A stretch of 61,396 bases of DNA, filler included, from Platydemus manokwari (taxonomy: Eukaryota), in the NCBI GenBank assembly GCA_037951405.1. It is 6 parts of 6 records of this genome, joined end to end, with 100 filler letters (N's around TTAATTAATTAA, not from the genome) between each part and the next. Parts side by side here need not be neighbours in the genome. Positions count along the whole stretch, not along the records: positions 1 to 9,319 come from JBBMOY011265651.1; 5 more parts are not named here. The stretch is one strand, 5' to 3'. The notes below the pieces were generated by a model. That model did no database searches, was not told where the DNA came from, and saw only the letters and a list, made by a program, of their open reading frames with translations. This document shows positions 1 to 11,650 of this stretch, piece after piece. The first letter of the stretch is position 1. Each line of letters begins with the position of its first letter. Position numbers and translations under genes: made by a program.

Positions 1-359
1 ATTACATTTATATTCGTTAATTAATATTTTTTATAATGCATATCTGAATGAATATAATTTAAAAATTTTCATAAAAAAAAATGTTTTTGGCAATTTTAAA
101 TGATTTTTAAGGTGCGTCTAAAAATTTTAGCCGGACTGTATATATATATATATGTTTGTGTGTGTGTATATATGATAACAATAATAATAATAGTTGTCTA
201 AAAATTCAAGTCTTTCTTTAAGATATTTATATGGTAACAGCAATCTATACATACTTTTTCCGACTCCGTCTCGATTTTTACTGAGTTCAGATTTGGTTTT
301 AAATTTTACTTTCAATTAAATATTTACGATAAATTGTAGAAATATTATTCTCTTTGTAG

Positions 360-612: not shown

Positions 613-1758
613 ATCTCTAAACCACGCCATCATGATAAACCCAATTTTACAATTTTTTTCATTTATTTAAAGGAAAAAAAACTTTCCTCTCACCAAATAT
701 CACAGTTCATTCGTTCTATACTCGATTTCATGCATCTTTGGTTGATTAGCTAATTTTATCCTTAATTTTAATTCCAGAAAAAAATTGAAGCAAGATAAAT
801 TCAATGATAAGATCACGACAGAGTTGTTTGATTAATTTTTTAGGAAATTTTTTTTTCTTTTCAGAAGAAAATCCGAAATTCATTTTTCCAGGGCAATCAA
901 AACGACAACAATTTATTTTGATTCTATTGAAAATGTTGCCAAAAAAAATTTTGTAGGGCGATTTGAAAATACAAAATAAATAAATCAGCTACAATTATTA
1001 ATTTATAATTAATTAATTTATATTAATTTATAAGGTTTTAATAATATTTTCATTATGTTTTAATGAATTTTAAAATTTTATAATAATCGAGTTTCATGTT
1101 AGACAGTTTAAGTGGTCGTAAATTTATTGAATTATCGGATCATTTGTGGTTTATCGTAAGATATTTTTACAAGATAATGAAGTTGTAAATCAACATAAAC
1201 AACGAATATTTGATTTATTATTATTCATTTTCATTTTCTTTATCTTTTTTATATCTTCACTTTAACTTATTTAAGTTTTCTTTAGAACCTCTTTATACCT
1301 TCCTCATTCTATTATATATTTTCATGTCATAAAAATTCGCCAAATCGAATCCAAATGAGTGATAGCCCCACTATTTTATAAAACATCCATTTAAAACGAT
1401 TGGAAAAGTCAAGATACTTTAAATAAATTAATATCTATGTCATAAGATTTATTAAAATACAAATTTGGTTCATTTTTCTAAGATAGATTTTGTCCTGCTT
1501 CTATCTCGAAGATTGTGACTTGTGACGTCATCGGCTCAGTGAAGGCACAGCCTTTTACAATGTTGCTTTCTTTTTTCACTCTTCTTGGGTCTCTTGGGGT
1601 TGGAAAAACTACTAGAAAAATCAAAAAAGTACAGAAGATAGGAATACAATTTTTATTGATAATAGCAGCTTATTAAGCTAACATCTGAAATACTATAATA
1701 ATTTTAAATAATTTTTAAATAAATTTTAATTGGAAAATTATTTTAATATTTTAGCCAT

Positions 1759-1922
1759 CCCTGATCAAGATTGAAAATCCAATCTCTCTAGAAAAAGAAA
1801 TTATATTTTGTTTAAAAAAATTGTATTGAGCGTTGGAATTAAATAAAATATAAGAAAATCGATGTAATGAGTTCTTTTATTGAAACATCAATTACAAGTG
1901 AAGTAGTCGCTACTAGCAACAA
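1759..1922 (+). repeat. Dispersed repeat family A, copy 1 (~165 bp)
   Basis: Colinear with 19705-19862 (shared cctgat..aagattga..aatctctctagaaaa..ttgaaacatcaatt.caagtgaagtag..gctacta). A partial reverse copy of the 3' end lies at ~24511-24540. Confidence 0.8.
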
Positions 1923-3814
1923 TCATTAATGCCTTAAGGAATTTAATCAATTCATAGTGCAATGAAAAATGAACGTTATAAGACATTAAAGAAAAGTCAC
2001 TCTCTATTAAATGGATTCCAATGATATGAATTTTCATTTAATAGATCTTCAGTAGTCTCTTGAAGTGAAATTTCTATGCGTGAGCTACACTGGTTAAAAG
2101 CTCCTTTTAGACACTAATTTTCATATGAGTGTTATATCGCTGACATATTTTCTTAATAATTTTATTTCTTCATAAAATGCAGCATATTGAATTCTGTTCT
2201 GACTAACATCTACTTATTTGTTATCAATTTCAGCTAATCTTATTATTGGTAGCCTTTTCGCCTGACTTACATTACTCATCTTTCACTTTTCTCTTTTAAA
2301 AATATCTTTAATCATTATCCTATGGTTTATTTTATTGTGTTTATTCTTATGCTGCTAACCTTTAATTATCTTCTTATTCATTCATTCATTTATTTTGTTT
2401 AATTTTTTATATTTATTTTATTAATTCTTCATATTCATGGCTAAAACCATAAATCACGTATTCATTGAAAAGTTCAAAAAAATTAAAAACCAAGGATCAT
2501 AAAATGTTTTGATTATTACCTGCTTCAGATCATTTCGTTGCTAGGACTGTCCCTGATTATCAAAATGTTTTGACAGAGCAGATATTACCAAATAGACATC
2601 AGAACAGATATTTTAAAAATGTTAACAGTATTGCATGTCAGAATCATGATAATATCATGATGAAACATTTTGATTGGATTTGGATTTTGAGATCAAAGGA
2701 TTTCGAATTCAAATATTGAAATTTTATTTAGGCATCGAGGTCTACACACCGGCTCTCCACTAGTTCTTCTCTATTTTTCTTCAACTCTTCTCCTTTTTAG
2801 ACTGTAACCAGGTAATGGGAACTTTAGCTTCCTTATCATTTTCTTTTTCTGTTAGCCCATGTTTTCTGGATGTATTGACATATCTCACCTTTTCCACTTT
2901 TCGTATGAGCTGAGAGCAATGTGCATTTTCTCTGAATTCACTATCTGAATGTACAACAAGGCTATTGTCAACATTATCAATAAATCCTTGAAATCATCAA
3001 GAAACATTCCAAGCATTCAGAATCAGAAATAATGAATATTTATATGCGTTCAAACTTCCTAATTTCAATTGGCCATGTACGAATTCGAATTAAGTCGAAA
3101 TTTGGACTGATATCAGAGTTTTTGAATTGTAAAGATGTCAAAACCTTAAGATGACTGAACTTAGGAAGTGATACATGGTGGTTGGGAGATCTTTGAAGGG
3201 ATTGGTTTGAAATTGGTTTAAGAAGTATTAAGTGGATATAAAAATATTTCAATTTCATTAAATATAATGTTTGTAAGGGCATTTTTGAAATAAAGAGTTC
3301 TTTGAAATTTGTTATTATGAGATCGGATACCCTAAATTTTATAAAAAGATTATTAACTTCAGAAATGAGATATTTGATAAATAGAGTTAATAAGCATTGT
3401 GTAGAGAATGTATGATAATATTAAGATGTTACATGTATCTCTCTTAATGATCAAGAAACAGTCCACCATATATGTATATTGTGTCAAATACGATGTATAG
3501 TTAGATAAAAAGCTATTCTTCGTATGCGATACAATAGAGGGTGCTTTTATGGGATTTTAAATTAATTTAATTTTATTAAAATGATTATTATGTTATTTTA
3601 AAATACCTTTGTATTTGAAATTGAGATTTGATAAAAAGAATCAATTTGATTTCTTACAAAATTTTTCGAGAACACTTGTAACAGCATCTTATTAAAGGTC
3701 TTAAAGGACTTAACGTTTTCTTCACCGCCTTTCAAAACACACCATCAGAAAATAAAGCTAACCCAATGAATGGGTGGTAACAGAAATTTTAAAATCATCA
3801 ATCACATGCAGGTT

Positions 3815-4782: not shown

Positions 4783-7700
4783 AATAAACACACTTTTGAT
4801 TATTTTCGTATTTTGTAATTGAAGAAGATTTTTTCTAAAATTCAATTCGAGACCATATTATAAAATGCTTCCTATTTCAAGCTAAATATTGTTGCGATAA
4901 TCCTGAACAATTAATTAATTGCTGAATCCAAAACCTAGAATGCTAAAACTATTTTTCGACTGCGTACTGCTCAGTACGACTTAGTAAATAATACACTCGA
5001 AAATATTTTTGGATTTCTCAGCATTTTTCAATAAAATGAAGAGATTAACAAGTATATTTTTAAATATTTTAATTTTTAAAATTTTAATTTTTTAATTTTA
5101 ATAAATTATTAAAAATACCTTTGAATAATTTGTTTTAATAGTTCAATCAAATATACTTTTTATGGATTAAAGTTCACAAATCGATTTCCAAATTTCTAAG
5201 AGCCAACAGTAATCAATTCTAAAAATATCAGCGCAGATTTCATTTTATTTTGCTTTGATATAAAACTTAAAATTTCCAAAATCAACAACAAAATATCCAG
5301 ATAAAATAATGAATAATAATGATTTTCTCACCTTATCGATACATGGTACCACAGATAAATGACACGGTTTGTTATCTTTATCGTATGAATGTATTTTTCA
5401 AGAACAAATTAGAAGAAACTTTGGAACAGTTTTATGTGAGCGTTTTAGTACTTGCTAAAAGGAATCACCTGTATTATTTATATTTTATTTATTTTAATTA
5501 ATAGTTGTAATCAGTACACTTCGTATTCGAAACGAGATGATTTTCATTTTTTAAGCGTAATAAAAAAAACCACAAAACGGCTTAGCACGCTTCATCAAAA
5601 TTACCGTTGACTGATACCTTGGAAGCGACCTGGGAAAAGTATAAAACAAAAATGAAAATGAAAAACAAAACATTAAATTAAAATGTATTAAAAAATAATA
5701 TTGAAAATGTTGAGATTAGAGATTCAATCAACAAACACACTCTCAAACTACAACAGCTATATTTTATCAATAAATTATATCAATGGGAACTTTGATAATA
5801 AACAAATATAATGGCACAGTGTATCAATTCGATGCATATTATTTCATCTCTACCGCTATCGATTTCCCCCTCTCTATATTGTTGATTGTACACAAAGAAA
5901 AATACCGAACTGTGGGTAAAATTGTCATTTTTATTAGTGGTAAAGTTTTTATGCTGTTTTACCAGCAGGATTCTTTATCTATTGGCTAGTTTTATAAATG
6001 TCAATAAGTTGTCATATCAATAATAAATATGAGGAGTCCAGCAAATGAAAATCAATGATAAAAAACAAAGTAATAAAAATCAATTGACTCAAATTCATGC
6101 GAAGAATTAAAGTTGAAATGTTTTAAGATAAAAATAAACAAAATCTAACTAAAACGGAATAATTCCTAAAATAAATGTATTATTTCTAAAAATAATTTTT
6201 TAAATAAAATAGTTTTAAAATTAAACTATAAAATTAATTATTTAAATTATTTAGTTTGTTTAAATAGATTAAAAGACAAAGTCAGTAAATAAAATTTTAA
6301 ATTAATAAATTAATTGGTATTTATAAATGCCAAGTCAATAGCAGAAAATTTGCTGCACAGTGGTTGGAGCAAAAATCAGCAAAAAAAAAGATTGTCATTT
6401 TCGGAAAAAAAGCCAAATCAAGAATTTTATCAGGAATTTTAACAAAACAGTTCCAGACGGGTTATTTCGGTTTTTATTATTTTTATATTATATTGTTAAG
6501 GATATTCGAGAATAGTCATTCAGAACATAGGTAAAAAGGTAGATTAAAGTGTTAATAGATACATAACAATATTTGCTGACTATGGTAGTTTTGTGCAGTA
6601 ATAGTACGTACTCACGTAATAGTAAGGCTGCTGCTAGCTGATCCTCAGTTGGTACTTGCAGTTTTGTATTCGAGCATGATTTTATTGTCGAATAAATTTT
6701 TAATTATTAAAGCTTAATTGATCAACTTATCTGTCTTTTGGAGTCAGATTAATAAGTTTACGTGTATTAGGTTGTGCTCTATATCAGGCAGATCTAACAA
6801 ATCAGCAACAATCCATGAACAAAAGAATTAAATGAATCAAATATCAGAATAAGAAATTCACTGAGTCCATATAATAAATTAACCAGCTAATCAAAATATT
6901 CTAATCAGGTACCATAATGCTGAGAAAAAATGAAAATAATCGGAATAAATTATATGATACGGATTAAAATCACGATTTTATAAGCAGTAGTCTCTGAGTT
7001 CATTTCGCGCAATATTCCGAAGTATGAAGAATAGCAATCAATAAATAAATACAATTTCAACAAGAACATACTTTAGTGAAGAACACAATTTATTTAGTTC
7101 AGAGTTAACAAATTCATATTCATTACAACTAAGAGTTCATAACGCATATTTAATTTATAAATATTCCGATTTTCCTTGAAGTAGCCTGCAATTTCTGGTA
7201 GATTTTTGATTCAGTTAAATTTTATTTTAGAAAGATTTATTGCTAAGGCAACTGTATCCAAGTCATTATCAAAAAACCTTCAGAGACTATCAATATGTTT
7301 TCTGTTTAATAGTTGGTTTCATAATTCATAAAGACTGTATCAATCATTGATTTTTGTTTTTGGATTTGTGATTTGGACTAAACTCCCCTTAGTAACTAGC
7401 TTATTAATAAGATTAGTTTGAAAAATGCTTAATCAGAATTGTGCTTTGTTATAACTTATTGGGTCAACATAAATAGAAAGAGAGAATTAAGTTAGAAATT
7501 GAATTATAGTTACCGAGTTGAAGTAGAATTTTGAATAATAATCAAAATTAATTCGAGCTTGACGTGGTTTATTCTTAATTCAATAATTTTAAATCGATTA
7601 GCGCTAGTGAATTACATTACTCTATCGTCGCTGATTCCTATTTCATCTGTAACTGATATCGAAACTAAAGAACTATCCCCGTCATTAACTGTTTATTTCG

Positions 7701-8699
7701 ACCGAAGTCTAAATTTTGGTAATACAACCTCTATAATAATCTCTTCTGAAAATCAACCTAACAACCAAAATTTTCATAATTAACGACTGTTGTTTTTGGA
7801 ATAGATTATCACAAAATTTCTGGTAATGGAAATCTTAATCAGATTGGTGCTCCATTTATACCGATTTTCTCGCACTACTGTGCAGTAAAAATAATCAATT
7901 TCTTTGTATTTCAATCCTAAACTCTTCCCAACACCTTGATCCAATATTACGAAGATATATTTATAAATCATAAACTTTTCCAAAAGGTTGTGATCATTAT
8001 TTGTACCATTTTCAGCTGGTAGTGTATACATTAACCAATAAATTGAAATAAAATTATGTTGGTTATTGATCGAAAAGTTAACGATCATGTCCATATTTTT
8101 TATTAAGTTATCATCGATTATCATTTGTTTCACTTTTCCCATCATTGTAGAATTCAAATAAACAATACAGAGTGTCCTTACTTACGCAATTCCCATAGGT
8201 TAAATGTCGACGCGACAAAAAACAATACAAGGCTAATACTATTGAGTTATAAAAAGGAATCACAAACACTGGTTTAGGACAAGATAATAACAGAAAGATG
8301 GAAGGAGCTCGTATGTATCAAAATATAAAGTTAAGAAAAAGATGTTATTTTTAATATAAAACACATCGAGAAAAAAGCCGTGATTGTGATCTTGAATGAG
8401 ATCAGTTTTATTCTACGTGAAGATCTAATTGGACAATGATGACAATGCAAGTCCATTGTGTTCAAGAGCCATTTTGATAAAGGGAAAAAGAAAATCGAAA
8501 ATAAAATATGAATATTGTTGACTCCACTAAAAATTTCACGATTTATGTTTGATCAATTTTTCTGTTTATGTAGAATAGAAAAGTCCATAACCAATATCAT
8601 GAATAAACATTTTAAGGATAACAAAAAATAACAATAAAAATAAGGCCACAATGTATGGAAGAACGCCAAATATTACGCACGGGAAATTAATACGTCTAT

Positions 8700-8939
8700 T
8701 CATACATTTGAACCTCCTACTATTCTTGTTATAAGATTAATGTTTGCATTGACGCTGATGTTGTATTTACTTAACAACTCTTCATTCTCTAACGTCTCTC
8801 CAGAAAATGTTAGTCGTTGTTCACTAATGGAAATTCCTATTTTTTCAACTATTTTCTGCTTCAGTTGCAGCACGGTTTCATGTGGAAATATTTCCAAAGA
8901 ATTGATTGACCCATTCATCTCTCTCACAAATATGTTCAT
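8700..8939 (-). CDS. Stand-alone divergent ubiquitin-like protein, 79 aa, with GG at 75-76 and an SNV tail
   Basis: Intact single-exon ORF, ungapped and colinear with ubiquitin (31/76 identities counted by hand), including QRLxFxG, LE, LSxYNI and RxxGG. Confidence 0.9.
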   Translation of the reverse strand: MNIFVREMNGSINSLEIFPHETVLQLKQKIVEKIGISISEQRLTFSGETLENEELLSKYNISVNANINLITRIVGGSNV

Positions 8940-9319
8940 TGCATGAAAATTTCTTCAAAATTTAAATTCAAAGCTTTCTGATTTAACAGGAAGTTAAATC
9001 AAAATATGATCTTAATAATTTTAAAACATCCTTCAAGAAGTAATACTAAATCAAATGGTTTAAACAAATATCAATTAGGCCATAAATATTTAATGAATAT
9101 TTATTGCAATTGTGTTTGATTATTTACCTCTTTATCAAACATATGTATTTTAGAACTGTCGGAATAATCTGATAGGTAAAATGTTTTTTTGTAAATAATA
9201 AATTAAGATTCTAAAATAAGCATAATCCTTATAGACGAAAAATTTCAACATGTTTTCCTATTTTAAGGAATATATCATCCAAATGATTCAAACTTTTTGT
9301 TAATTTTATTGACAATTTA

Positions 9320-9419
9320 NNNNNNNNNNNNNNNNNNNNNNNNNNNNNNNNNNNNNNNNNNNNTTAATTAATTAANNNNNNNNNNNNNNNNNNNNNNNNN
9401 NNNNNNNNNNNNNNNNNNN
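9320..9419. other. Artificial scaffold spacer (44N-TTAATTAATTAA-44N)
   Basis: Identical 100-bp structure at 9320-9419, 19543-19642, 28578-28677, 40983-41082 and 50588-50687. The 12-mer places stops in all six frames. Confidence 0.95.
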
Positions 9420-9943
9420 AATAATCAAGATGAAGGAAATTATAATAATAGAGATTATAATAAATAAAATAATAATACAAAAATTCGTATAGAAAAATTA
9501 TACTAAATAAATGTTGGCGAATTCATGATTAATAAATGATTACAGTAGCGAAAAGAAAATAATTTTATAATATAATAGGAAAATGAAAATAATAAAATAT
9601 TTTCGGCTGTATGCCGTAACTCACTTGCTTTCAGATGTTAAATTATTTGATATATTTATATCCATTCATTGATAATTCAATAGCTACACTATAGTGTGAA
9701 ACATTGACGATTTTGATGAAAATTAAACTAATTCTTGAAATAATGTTCATAAGTTCATAGAATCAGAAATAAGGCCCACTTAAATTAATTCTACTCTGTC
9801 ATATATATGATTCAAAAATTATTTCAAGAAAATTTTCATTCTATTGAATTTTAACTTTAGATGAAAAAAATTTATCATTGTTTTGTTAAATCATTTTTTC
9901 AATTAGGTTCATATTCAAATATTATTTTATTTAATTAAAATTT

Positions 9944-11650
9944 ATGCGAACATTTAATTTATTATGCTCTGGGAAATCTGTATTAGAAAAGTCTAGTTTT
10001 AAAAATTATATTCTTAAAATTATAAAGCATACTGGTCCTATAAATGTCCACAATTTTATGCGAGAAATGCTGACTAATGATAAACATGTAAATAAAAGAT
10101 TGATGATTATTTTGATATTTTGGTATGACAGGGTTATTATATTCATGGAAATGTTTTCGGAAGTAAGGGAGATTATATAACATCTCCGGAAATATCACAA
10201 ATTTTCGGCGAAGTAATTTCACTTTAATTTTTATATATTATTATTTAGATTTGTTAGTTAATTGGGATTTGGATAATGAATGAATGGATAAATCAAAGAA
10301 AATGCCATCCATTTCAAATCGTAGAATTGGGTCCTGGGAGAGCAACAATGATTCATGATGTTTTAACTGTCGGTTACTAATTTCTGGGTTGATTTTATCA
10401 TAATCAATTTTAGGCCATTAACAAGTTTCCAGATTTGATAAATGTTTTATCCATCAAATTGATTGAAATCAGCCCTAAATTGCGAAAATCACAAGAAAGT
10501 GTATTGAAACAATGTTTCAATAAGTTGGGTCGTGAAGTTCCTGTGGAATGGTTTGATCAGTTGGATCATGTTCCAAAGGGAATTCCATCGTGTTATTTAG
10601 CTCATGAATTTTTTGATGCTCTTCCTATTCATAAATTTAAAGTTATTCATTATTAAGTTAAATTAAATGAATGATAATTAAATAATGATCTACATATTAG
10701 TTTGAAATGAAAATATAAATCTTTGTTTGTTTTCGATGGAAATGGAAATGATTCTCGATAACTGATAAATCATAGATTTAAAATACTTGTTTAAATTGCT
10801 TATTGTTATTATTTCGATTTTGCCGGCTTGAATAATTTAACTTTTTCCTTTTTAATGAATTACATTGAGTTCCTTCATGCAGAGAGATAACGATGGAAAA
10901 TGGCGAGAGATTTTAATCAATGTCGAAAATAATGAATTGAAATTTATTTTATCCCACAAAGAAACACCGGCAACTTTGGCATTTAAGAATGTAATTTGAG
11001 AGAGAATAAAAAACTGTTGAATATTGATTGTAGATTCTCGACAAATATGGTGATTTGAATGACTTTGAATTGAGTCCGATGTCTTTATCGATTCTTGATA
11101 ATATTGCTTCGCGTATATCTGAATCGGGTGGATTTGGATTGATAGCTGATTATGGGCATCTTGGTGATAAAGGAGATACTTTTCGTGTTGGAAAAACTAA
11201 CTTATTTTAATTTTGTTTTTAATTTCCATAATAGGCATTCAAAGATCATCAACTTTCCGATCCGCTGAAAAATCTCGGCGAAAGCGATATGACGGCCGAT
11301 GTTAATTTTCAATTATTTCAACAACATTTGCGAACGAAATTTTTGGGAAGATGTTTATTAATTTACAATTGTGGCAATGGTTTTTCATGGAATTCGTTTT
11401 TATTTTAGTATCAATCCATGGACCGGTGTATCAGAAATCGTTTTTGAGGAATATGGGTATTGATGTTCGATTAGAAATGTTGTTACGTCATTGCAAATCG
11501 ACATCGGAAATGAAATATTTGATTCGTTCATATCAATTGATGATGGATTGTAAAGAAATGGGTGATCGATTTAAATTTTTATCGATTTTACCTTTGCTTG
11601 ATTGTTATTCAGATCAATATTTACCAGCGGGATTTTGTGAATTGAGATAA
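9944..11650 (+). CDS. NDUFAF7: Mitochondrial protein arginine methyltransferase NDUFAF7/MidA, 394 aa. Exons 9944-10087, 10132-10212, 10258-10368, 10414-10641, 10883-10990, 11034-11186, 11235-11352, 11409-11650
   Basis: All introns are GT-AG and the joined frame is open (1185 nt). Family motifs: GPI..[94 protein letters not shown], PAGF. Confidence 0.95.

What the first reader, a model, noticed from the sequence alone, without database searches (positions are those of the whole stretch)
8700..8939. Candidate lineage-specific ubiquitin-like modifier: R72 and GG kept, K48/K63/I44 patch lost
Seen: an intact single-exon 79-aa ORF aligning to ubiquitin without gaps at 31/76 identity, ending R-I-V-G75-G76 plus a 3-residue tail (SNV). 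K27, K29, K33, R42 and R72 are kept. Changed positions are K6R, K11S, K48E, K63V, L8M, I44T, H68N and R74V. Established: true ubiquitin is nearly invariant in animals; NEDD8 has A72, which excludes it from the ubiquitin E1; FUBI is fused to ribosomal S30; SUMO, UFM1 and URM1 are far less similar; a short tail after GG is the usual pro-form removed by a UBL protease. Inference: this fits none of those. It could be a separate conjugatable modifier that is activated by UBA1/UBA6, cannot form K48/K63 chains and is poorly read by I44-patch receptors, for example a chain cap or decoy.
Basis: partly seen in the sequence, partly recalled or inferred. Interest (0 to 1): 0.75.

Follow-up and report, generated by a model that had tools for sequence, protein, structure and literature searches.

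The report
Fast-evolving planarian ubiquitin-like gene copy
The window holds an intact 79-residue ubiquitin-fold gene ending in Gly-Gly, the fast-evolving twin of a more conservative copy in a flatworm genome that has multiplied ubiquitin-like domains more than 150-fold; it looks like a working gene, but nothing here shows it is attached to other proteins.

Summary
Window 8700-8939 (minus strand) is an intact ATG-to-TGA ORF of 79 aa.

The genome is a dugesiid planarian, probably Dugesia japonica. It has its own ubiquitin and its own NEDD8. It also has at least 150 further divergent ubiquitin-family domains, most of them in multi-exon poly-UBL arrays that lack GG.

The window ORF has one close paralogue, L002 (61% identity, ends RIRGG+LISD). 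The two share an 81%-identical 170-nt 5' flank but no alignable 3' flank.

The window copy evolves much faster than L002 (branch 0.61 against 0.07; 14 private residue changes against 1-2). Neutral decay nevertheless fits poorly:
- a simulated neutral copy stays open only about 1% of the time;
- there are 30 residue changes where about 40 are expected (P<=0.002);
- 17 of 18 core hydrophobic positions are kept;
- AlphaFold gives a confident beta-grasp fold.

My verdict is a real, lineage-specific, stand-alone ubiquitin-like gene, a new member of a known kind. Conjugation, choice of E1 and a chain-cap or decoy role remain untested. Orthologues in other planarians could not be searched.

The parts
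8700..8939 (-). Complete coding sequence (79 codons plus TGA) of a single-domain ubiquitin-family protein
   Evidence: ORF list and sequence. Pfam PF00240 at 59.1 bits. AlphaFold2 pLDDT 90.7 with beta-grasp topology. Foldseek hits on ubiquitin at TM 0.90-0.93.
8712..8717 (-). Codons for G75-G76 (GGA GGT), the di-glycine at the position of ubiquitin's C-terminus
   Evidence: Read directly from the sequence. Also kept in the paralogue L002.
8703..8711 (-). Three-residue tail S-N-V after GG, which I infer to be a pro-peptide
   Evidence: Sequence. pLDDT is below 50 for residues 76-79. Other GG-ended UBLs of this genome also carry short tails: L002 has LISD, L012 has F, NEDD8 (L044) has DF and mono-Ub (L018) has IL.
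8940..9109 (-). Conserved 5' flank, a candidate promoter, outron or 5'UTR. It is 81% identical (132/163) to the 5' flank of paralogue L002. An AG acceptor-like site conserved in both copies lies at 8978-8979.
   Evidence: Alignment A1. The genome search finds only these two full copies plus an 80-nt remnant. The mismatch rate of 0.19 compares with 0.43 at synonymous sites, Fisher p=0.001. The role of the AG is inference only.
8708..9125 (-). Full extent of DNA homology with the paralogous locus C1139995 (L002). It stops at the GG/tail codons.
   Evidence: Whole-window self-genome search. The 3' flank is at chance level, 49-51% in a forced alignment.
8846..8897 (-). Block of codons about 15-31 (LEIF.HETV.QLKQKIVEK) that is nearly identical to L002 even at synonymous sites
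   Evidence: Alignment A1. Nucleotides 61-90 of the CDS are 93% identical against 71.5% overall. The cause is unexplained: constraint or a short gene-conversion tract.

Best explanation
The ORF is a real, stand-alone, single-exon gene for a divergent ubiquitin-family (beta-grasp) protein. It is specific to a planarian lineage.

It arose by an old duplication of a GG-ended ubiquitin-like gene. The conservative descendant of that gene is L002 on contig C1139995. The window copy has since diverged about eight times faster, yet it stayed under protein-level constraint: open frame, hydrophobic core, GG and a conserved 5' control region.

The most likely mode of action is inferred, not shown. The gene would be translated as a 79-aa precursor and fold like ubiquitin. 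A ubiquitin/UBL C-terminal hydrolase would remove the SNV tail to expose G76. The protein would then act through its remodelled surface (M8/T44/I70, no K6/K11/K48/K63, V74). That action could be as a conjugated mark that cannot be extended through the usual lysines, or as a free ubiquitin look-alike that binds some ubiquitin-system enzymes, as engineered ubiquitin variants do.

Shown here: ORF, fold, family, paralogy, rate asymmetry, constraint and flank conservation. Inferred: expression, processing and any conjugation.
For: - **ORF and family.**
- **Fold.** AlphaFold2 pLDDT 90.7, strands at 2-6, 12-16, 41-45 and 66-71 with a helix at 23-34. The top 50 Foldseek PDB hits are all ubiquitin or ubiquitin variants, TM 0.90-0.93.
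- **Paralogy.** L002 is 61% identical. The two are sisters with SH-aLRT 98.
- **Constraint.**
  - NG86 dN/dS is 0.48, and N against S gives Fisher p=0.012.
  - Starting from L002 and applying the observed 65 nucleotide changes neutrally, the frame stays open in only 0.8-1.5% of runs (0.4% if GG must also survive).
  - Even among the open survivors, about 40 residue changes (sd 2.9) are expected against 30 observed, P<=0.002.
  - There is no indel in 76 codons.
  - 17 of 18 core hydrophobic positions are kept.
- **Flanks.** The 5' flank is 81% identical while the 3' flank is at chance, and synonymous pS is 0.43.
- **Not part of a repeat.** The locus is not part of a high-copy repeat, unlike other parts of the window.
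- **Not a known UBL.** The genome has separate canonical Ub genes and NEDD8, so this is not one of them.
Against:
- The window copy is strongly accelerated: 14 private residue changes against 1-2 in L002, p=0.001-0.004. This is also what relaxed constraint looks like.
- One core residue is radically changed (I13N), and I44 and R74 are lost only in this copy.
- dN/dS of 0.48 is only moderate.
- No orthologue in another species was found or could be looked for properly. The single-sequence word search found no candidate, and neither the profile word search nor the exhaustive search listed a close relative; their lists are dominated by multi-domain ubiquitin proteins.
- The contig ends 380 bp upstream of the ATG, so upstream exons cannot be excluded.
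- AlphaFold confidence is not sensitive to destabilising point changes.
Confidence: 0.6

Rival explanations
1. The ORF is a dying duplicate. After duplication of the L002-type gene the window copy lost its function. It is drifting and happens still to be open, or it died only recently after a period of constraint.
For: - The terminal branch is about eight times longer, 0.61 against 0.074.
- The relative-rate test gives 14:2 and 14:1.
- Functionally central ubiquitin residues are lost only in this copy: I44T, R74V, K6R, K11S and I13N.
- The PF00240 score falls from 80.8 bits in L002 to 58.2 bits here.
- No evidence of expression is available.
- An 80-nt remnant of the shared flank with no ORF (L036) shows that copies of this unit do decay.
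Against: - A neutral simulation keeps the frame open in about 1% of runs, and in 0.4% if GG must also survive.
- There are 30 residue changes against about 40 expected, P<=0.002.
- There are no indels in 76 codons.
- The 5' flank is conserved at 81% while the 3' flank is randomised.
- The core hydrophobic positions are kept.
Confidence: 0.25
2. The protein is a new conjugatable modifier, activated by the ubiquitin E1 (UBA1 or UBA6 class). It is attached to substrates or to ubiquitin chains, where it acts as a cap that cannot be extended through K48 or K63 and is poorly read by I44-patch receptors.
For: - GG lies at 75-76 with a short tail, and R42 and R72 are kept.
- K48 and K63 are lost in both paralogues: E and V here, V and A in L002.
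- The C-terminus is predicted to be flexible.
- The genome has at least three loci with a UBA1-class E1 UFD domain.
- From established knowledge, R72 is the main discriminator between the ubiquitin and NEDD8 E1 enzymes.
Against: - None of the biochemical steps is testable here.
- R74V, L71T and L73I change the tail that E1 enzymes and hydrolases grip.
- The rapid divergence argues against a substrate that must fit a conserved E1/E2/E3 cascade.
- The conservative sister L002 is the better candidate for a modifier.
- Most relatives in this genome (the array units) have lost GG altogether, which shows the family readily works without conjugation.
Confidence: 0.2
3. The ORF is one exon of a larger gene, for example the first or last UBL unit of a poly-UBL array or a UBL fusion protein, and is joined by splicing at or near the GG codons.
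For: - Most UBL domains of this genome are single exons of multi-exon poly-UBL genes with 41-51-nt phase-2 introns. Their donor sits at the R74 codon, AG|GT.
- A GAG|GT occurs at the G75/G76 codons here and in L002.
- The contig ends 380 bp upstream of the ATG.
Against: - The frame has its own ATG at the ubiquitin M1 position, with an in-frame TGA five codons upstream and a stop three codons after GG.
- The candidate donor is GTT.. in both copies, while all 12 array donors checked are GTA or GTG.
- No second PF00240 match exists anywhere on the 9.3-kb contig.
- Homology with L002 ends at the tail.
- The 3' flanks of the two copies are unrelated.
Confidence: 0.06

Closest known systems
Ubiquitin (PF00240; polyUb, Ub-S27a and Ub-L40 genes of the same genome)
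   Same: The 76-residue beta-grasp aligns without gaps. M1, I3-V5, G10, K27, K29, K33, Q41-L43, F45, G47, L50, Y59-I61, R72 and G75-G76 are kept. A short C-terminal extension follows GG. The predicted structure superposes on ubiquitin at TM 0.90-0.93.
   Different: Only 30-31 of 76 residues are identical. The ORF lacks K6, K11, K48, K63, I44, H68 and R74. It is a solitary single-copy ORF, not a head-to-tail polyprotein or a ribosomal fusion.
L002 paralogue (contig C1139995), an unnamed GG-ended UBL of the same genome
   Same: 61% identity and the same length. Both end in GG plus a short tail. Both have M8, have lost K48 and K63, and have N68. They share a conserved 170-nt 5' flank and are sisters in the tree.
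   Different: L002 keeps K6, K11, I13, I44 and R74 and is 55% identical to ubiquitin. Its terminal branch is 0.074 against 0.61 for the window copy.
NEDD8/Rub1
   Same: A stand-alone ubiquitin-like protein with GG and a short pro-peptide.
   Different: The ORF has R72, not A72, and is only 31% identical to this genome's own NEDD8 (L044, ending LVLALRGG-DF), which is a separate and well-conserved gene.
Ubiquitin variants encoded by ubiquitin 'pseudogenes' (for example human UBBP4-derived Ub-KEKS) and engineered UbV inhibitors. This comparison rests on my own knowledge and was not tested here.
   Same: These are extra ubiquitin-derived single-domain genes outside the canonical loci that keep GG and have an altered surface. 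Engineered UbVs are among the top structural hits.
   Different: Those variants differ from ubiquitin at a few positions. This ORF differs at 45 of 76 and belongs to an old, lineage-specific clade.
Poly-UBL array genes of the same genome (L021-L033)
   Same: They share derived residues against ubiquitin (QLK.KI.EKIG, EQRL.F.G, INL). They fall in one clade that excludes canonical ubiquitin, SH-aLRT 89.
   Different: The array units have no GG and usually no ATG of their own. They are joined through 41-51-nt phase-2 introns into long head-to-tail proteins with ..LR-x-GW-.. linkers.

Membership tests
Ubiquitin family (Pfam PF00240, beta-grasp) | Profile match above the curated cut-off | tested here: met
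   59.1 bits against a cut-off of 25.4, E=3.5e-16, covering profile positions 1-70 of 72.
Ubiquitin family (Pfam PF00240, beta-grasp) | beta-beta-alpha-beta-beta-(3-10 helix)-beta fold | tested here: met
   AlphaFold2 pLDDT 90.7 with the expected elements. Foldseek hits on ubiquitin at TM 0.90-0.93 and rmsd about 1 A. This is a prediction, not a solved structure.
Ubiquitin proper | Near-invariant sequence (at most a few changes among animals) encoded as a polyubiquitin or ribosomal-protein fusion | tested here: not met
   30/76 identity to this genome's ubiquitin. The ORF is solitary, and canonical genes exist elsewhere in the genome.
Conjugatable (type I) ubiquitin-like modifiers | C-terminal Gly-Gly at the end of the beta-grasp, followed by a short removable extension | tested here: met
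   G75-G76 are followed by SNV and a stop, and the tail is predicted to be disordered.
Conjugatable (type I) ubiquitin-like modifiers | Processing by a UBL hydrolase, E1 adenylation and thioester formation, and isopeptide conjugates in vivo | not testable with these tools
   This needs biochemistry. Only the E1-contact residues R42 and R72 can be seen to be kept, and R74 to be lost.
NEDD8/Rub1 | A72 and orthology to NEDD8 | tested here: not met
   R72, and 31% identity to the genome's true NEDD8 (L044).
FUBI (Fau) / ribosomal fusions | UBL fused in frame to ribosomal protein S30, S27a or L40 | tested here: not met
   A stop codon follows three residues after GG, and no ribosomal-protein sequence lies downstream.
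ISG15 / FAT10 | Two tandem UBL domains in one polypeptide | tested here: not met
   There is a single PF00240 match on the contig.
Planarian poly-UBL array genes (this genome) | One UBL per exon, phase-2 mini-introns with an AG|GTR donor at codon 74, no GG, and GW linkers | tested here: not met
   The ORF has its own ATG and stop, GG is present, the candidate donor is GTT, and there are no neighbouring units. Phylogenetically the ORF is allied to these genes.
Processed retrocopy / pseudogene of ubiquitin | Neutral divergence: stops, frameshifts, dN/dS about 1, and no conserved promoter | tested here: not met
   The frame is open (about 1% expected), there are no indels, dN/dS is 0.48, residue changes are below the neutral expectation (P<=0.002) and the 5' flank is conserved. 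A recent loss of function is not excluded.

The most novel reading that the evidence does not exclude
The window ORF and its sister L002 are a planarian-specific third ubiquitin-type modifier system beside ubiquitin and NEDD8. L002 would be the general modifier. The window copy would be a specialised variant without K48, K63 or I44 that terminates or masks chains, or titrates ubiquitin-system enzymes. The poly-UBL arrays of more than 150 domains in the same genome would be GG-less derivatives of this lineage.
Probability: 0.15. Interest if true: 0.75.

Novelty: new member of a known kind. Interest (0 to 1): 0.4.

Why it matters
New ubiquitin-like modifiers are rare in animals. Each one found so far (NEDD8, ISG15, FAT10, UFM1) opened a field of its own. 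Planarians are a model for stem cells and regeneration, and ubiquitin-system genes matter there.

A lineage-specific pair of GG-ended UBLs gives a concrete and cheap set of candidates for RNAi, in situ hybridisation and conjugation assays. One member of the pair is conservative and the other is fast-evolving. They sit beside a very large expansion of GG-less poly-UBL genes.

If the window copy turns out to be only a drifting duplicate, the finding is ordinary. The family expansion would still be worth describing.

Tried and rejected
- **Word-indexed protein searches.** The search with the ORF found no candidate sharing three 5-mers. The same tool with a two-sequence profile returned only ubiquitin and di-ubiquitin fragments, none above 44% identity to the ORF.
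- **Exhaustive phmmer search.** It gave 12,776 hits, but the 150 shown are all multi-domain polyubiquitins or poly-UBL proteins whose domain scores add up. Single-domain orthologues, if any, are hidden. The search therefore neither proves nor disproves lineage specificity.
- **Exact look-ups.** The ORF, L002, L012, Ub-L40 and NEDD8 of this genome are not in the protein collection. The genome's proteins are evidently not indexed, which weakens any argument from absence.
- **A fungal origin.** I first suspected a fungus because the canonical ubiquitin has S19 and the genome is very A+T-rich. I rejected this: 63 Wnt exon matches and no Zn2Cys6 domain, and the best Wnt relative is Schmidtea mediterranea wntP-3 at 68%.
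- **Scans that found nothing useful.** The bacterial promoter/terminator scan is irrelevant for an animal and no better than shuffles. The Rfam scan of 8300-9319 found nothing.
- **Literature.** Three searches found no description of planarian UBL expansions.
- **Poly-UBL proteins from elsewhere.** P0003 and P0005 come from metagenome or Logan contigs and lack the planarian GW linkers. They are not the same family.
Introns were checked by coordinates and frame only.
  - Seven tiny contigs (L003, L005, L019, L043, L045, L046, L053) carry animal/human-type P19 ubiquitin. They may be contaminant, possibly human. After the first translation they were left out of all further analyses and were not searched.

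Full report
**1. The observation**

On the minus strand, window 8700-8939 is an ATG-to-TGA reading frame of 79 codons. An in-frame TGA lies five codons upstream of the ATG. The frame ends ..R72-I-V-G75-G76-S-N-V-stop. Pfam's ubiquitin model matches at 59.1 bits (cut-off 25.4, E=3.5e-16) over profile positions 1-70.

Against solved structures, every hit in the 60 shown is ubiquitin or a ubiquitin-derived chain (viral ubiquitin, Affilin variants); the alignments shown, to polyubiquitin, are gapless over residues 1-76 with 31 identities. The window is about 27% G+C, and only four ORFs of 70 aa or more occur in 9.3 kb. An 80-codon open frame with a strong family match is therefore not a chance event.

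**2. The organism**

The window is contig C1265651 of a 911-Mb assembly in 1.99 million contigs. The genome holds many Wnt exons and no fungal Zn2Cys6 domain. One Wnt exon is 68% identical to Schmidtea mediterranea wntP-3 and 51% identical to a Dendrocoelum lacteum Wnt. The animal is therefore a triclad planarian close to Schmidtea but not that genus.

The size and extreme fragmentation fit the Dugesia japonica shotgun assembly described in PMC4654569, which reports 89.3 Gb as 99x coverage, about 0.9 Gb, and 'very short contigs'. This species assignment is an inference, not a demonstration.

**3. The ubiquitin family in this genome**

The canonical genes are present:
- a polyubiquitin (L006);
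- Ub-S27a (L009);
- Ub-L40 (L013, L014);
- a mono-ubiquitin (L018);
- a well-conserved NEDD8 with A72 (L044).

The genome's ubiquitin has S19. Animal/human-type P19 ubiquitin occurs only on seven tiny contigs (230-830 bp). I took these for possible contaminant, perhaps human, and left them out of everything after the first translation.

Beyond the canonical genes, the Pfam model finds at least 150 further domains, which is a lower bound. Most lie in tandem arrays, for example L021 1687-3628. Each unit there is one exon. Units are separated by 41-51-nt GT..AG phase-2 introns whose donor is the AG|GT at codon 74. The spliced product would be a head-to-tail chain of very divergent UBL domains linked by ..LR-x-GW-.., with no GG between units. 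I checked this by frame and coordinates only.

Three solitary GG-ended divergent UBLs exist:
- the window ORF;
- L002 (contig C1139995, ending RIRGG-LISD);
- L012 (contig C100122, ending RIRGG-F).

**4. Where the window ORF belongs**

Its only close relative is L002, at 61% identity with no gap in 76 codons. In a tree of 90 UBL domains from this genome the two are sisters (SH-aLRT 98). They lie with L012 and all array units in a clade that excludes canonical ubiquitin (support 89). With only 75 columns the deeper forks are weak.

The pair is very unequal. The terminal branch is 0.61 for the window copy and 0.074 for L002. With ubiquitin or L012 as outgroup, the window copy has 14 private residue changes against 2 or 1 (p=0.004 and 0.001). 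L002 is 42/76 identical to ubiquitin and the window ORF 30/76.

The losses of K6, K11, I13, I44 and R74 are private to the window copy. M8, N68 and the losses of K48 and K63 are shared by both.

**5. Alive or decaying?**

Five lines of evidence speak against neutral decay.
- **Open frame.** Starting from the L002 coding sequence, I applied the observed 65 nucleotide differences at random under an A+T-biased spectrum. The frame stayed open with its ATG in only 0.8-1.5% of runs, and in 0.4% if GG must also survive.
- **Residue changes.** Among the simulated survivors about 40 residue changes (sd 2.9) are expected. Thirty are observed (P<=0.002). NG86 gives dN/dS=0.48, dS=0.63, and N against S gives Fisher p=0.012.
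- **Indels.** There is no indel in 76 codons.
- **Core.** 17 of 18 core hydrophobic positions are kept, against 14.1-14.2 expected (P about 0.07); the exception is I13N.
- **Flanks.** The 170 nt upstream of the ATG are 81% identical between the two loci (132/163). The 3' flanks are at chance (49-51%) and synonymous sites differ at 43% (Fisher p=0.001).

Homology between the two loci spans only window 8708-9125. The unit occurs twice in the genome, plus an 80-nt remnant without an ORF in L036. It is not part of a high-copy repeat, unlike window 1-143, 1696-1928 and 6020-6630. A conserved 5' region with a randomised 3' flank is what an old duplication with a still-used promoter or 5'UTR would leave. 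It is not what a 5'-truncated, poly(A)-tailed retrocopy would leave.

Two caveats apply. A block of about 17 codons (LEIF.HETV.QLKQKIVEK) is nearly identical even at synonymous sites (93% over nt 61-90). Some homogenisation by gene conversion is therefore possible. A recent loss of function would also be invisible to these tests.

**6. Structure**

I built an alignment of 25 family members from this genome. With it AlphaFold2 gives a confident ubiquitin fold: pLDDT 90.7, strands at 2-6, 12-16, 41-45 and 66-71, a helix at 23-34, a short helix at 56-59, and a disordered tail at 76-79. All 50 best Foldseek hits in the PDB are ubiquitin or engineered ubiquitin variants, at TM 0.90-0.93.

**7. Is it an exon of something larger?**

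This is unlikely.
- The frame has its own ATG at ubiquitin's M1, with stops close on both sides.
- The contig has no second UBL match.
- The 3' flanks of the two paralogues are unrelated.

The contig ends 380 bp upstream of the ATG, so an upstream non-coding exon or a spliced-leader acceptor remains possible. A conserved AG lies at 8978-8979.

**8. How it most likely works**

The following are shown: a constrained, stand-alone ubiquitin-fold coding sequence with GG and a short tail, a conserved upstream region, and a conservative sister gene.

The following are inferred. The gene is expressed. A ubiquitin/UBL C-terminal hydrolase removes the tail, as for the other short-tailed UBLs of this genome. 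The product then acts through a remodelled surface. R42 and R72 are kept, and established work on ubiquitin and NEDD8 names them as E1 determinants. Activation by a UBA1-class E1 is therefore conceivable, and the genome has at least three loci with the UBA1-class UFD domain.

Several points make a non-conjugated or enzyme-binding role at least as likely as conjugation. The changes V74, T71 and I73 alter the gripped tail. The rate of change is high. Most of the family has abandoned GG. I put about 0.25 on a dying duplicate and about 0.06 on an exon of a larger gene.

**9. Comparison with what is known**

The ORF is a member of the ubiquitin family by profile and predicted fold. It fails the defining features of several named members:
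- ubiquitin proper (near invariance; polyprotein or ribosomal-fusion gene);
- NEDD8 (A72; a true NEDD8 exists in this genome);
- FUBI (S30 fusion);
- ISG15 and FAT10 (two domains).

SUMO, UFM1 and URM1 were not compared by their own models.

It resembles in kind the extra ubiquitin-derived genes that keep GG, such as ubiquitin variants from so-called pseudogenes (my own knowledge, not tested here). It is far more divergent than those.

No relative closer than ubiquitin itself was found outside this genome. The test is weak, however. This genome's own proteins are not in the collections. The exhaustive search listing was saturated by multi-domain proteins. Other planarian genomes could not be searched.

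**10. Verdict**

It is best read as a new, fast-evolving member of the ubiquitin family in a planarian, one of a pair, embedded in a striking lineage-specific UBL expansion. The claim that it is a new modifier is open. The conservative sister L002 is the stronger candidate for that role. I score interest as moderate, at 0.4.

Noticed in passing
L021 (C1195876) 1687-3628 and 9207-10000; also L022-L033: Tandem arrays of very divergent ubiquitin-like domains, at least 150 PF00240 matches genome-wide. Each domain is one exon. Domains are separated by 41-51-nt phase-2 GT..AG introns with conserved sequence, and the donor is the AG|GT at codon 74. The predicted product is a head-to-tail poly-UBL protein with ..LR-x-GW-.. 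linkers and no GG. Whole arrays are duplicated on at least 10 contigs with the same order of unit types. I found no description of this in three literature searches.
   Followed up: partly
L012 (C100122) 1498-1728, minus strand: A third solitary GG-ended divergent UBL of 77 aa, ending ARIRGG-F. It is 55% identical to ubiquitin and to L002 and 38% identical to the window ORF. It shares derived residues with the array units (EKIG, DEQ, FQG, SVIN).
   Followed up: partly
L003, L005, L019, L043, L045, L046, L053 (contigs of 230-830 bp): These tiny contigs encode animal/human-type ubiquitin with P19, whereas all long contigs encode S19 ubiquitin. They may be a contaminant, perhaps human. I left them out of all analyses after the first translation and did not search them further.
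   Followed up: no
window 1696-1928; window 6020-6630; window 1-143: Three dispersed repeats. The first is an element of about 225 bp, found on about 26 of the 40 places scored (many more candidates unscored) at 83-92% identity, which looks like a SINE or MITE. The second is a 600-bp repeat at 71-76% identity. The third is a contig-end repeat at 95-99% identity. The UBL locus lies outside all of them.
   Followed up: no
window 8846-8897 (codons about 15-31 of the ORF): This block is nearly identical to L002 at the nucleotide level, synonymous sites included. It is flanked by much more diverged coding sequence on both sides. The cause could be a short gene-conversion tract or a nucleotide-level constraint, and it is unexplained.
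   Followed up: partly
L036 (C1565689) 1389-1469: An 80-nt remnant, 79% identical to the conserved 5' flank shared by the window ORF and L002. No UBL reading frame follows it. It is probably a dead third copy.
   Followed up: yes
G000 contigs C103566, C1145716, C1130697, C1109232, C1981823: At least three loci carry the UBA1-class E1 ubiquitin-fold domain (PF09358). One sits in a 1001-aa open frame. The animal may therefore have more than one ubiquitin-type E1.
   Followed up: no
L016/L058 (C1032412) 1159-1740; L020 (C889679) 15-551; L056 (C1278409) 120-389: Further odd UBL genes. L016/L058 is a divergent di-UBL whose second unit is preceded by ..HRGG. L020 is a ubiquitin-like domain ending RLRGG and followed in frame by TQIFVRDF.. 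and a non-UBL extension. L056 is a UBL ending RLRGG-CSNTGSLAETP.
   Followed up: no
window 8566-8703, minus strand: A 45-aa ORF starts at an ATG that overlaps the UBL stop codon (GTATGA). It encodes a very hydrophobic peptide that looks like a transmembrane segment. It is not conserved at L002 and is most likely a by-product of T-rich DNA.
   Followed up: partly
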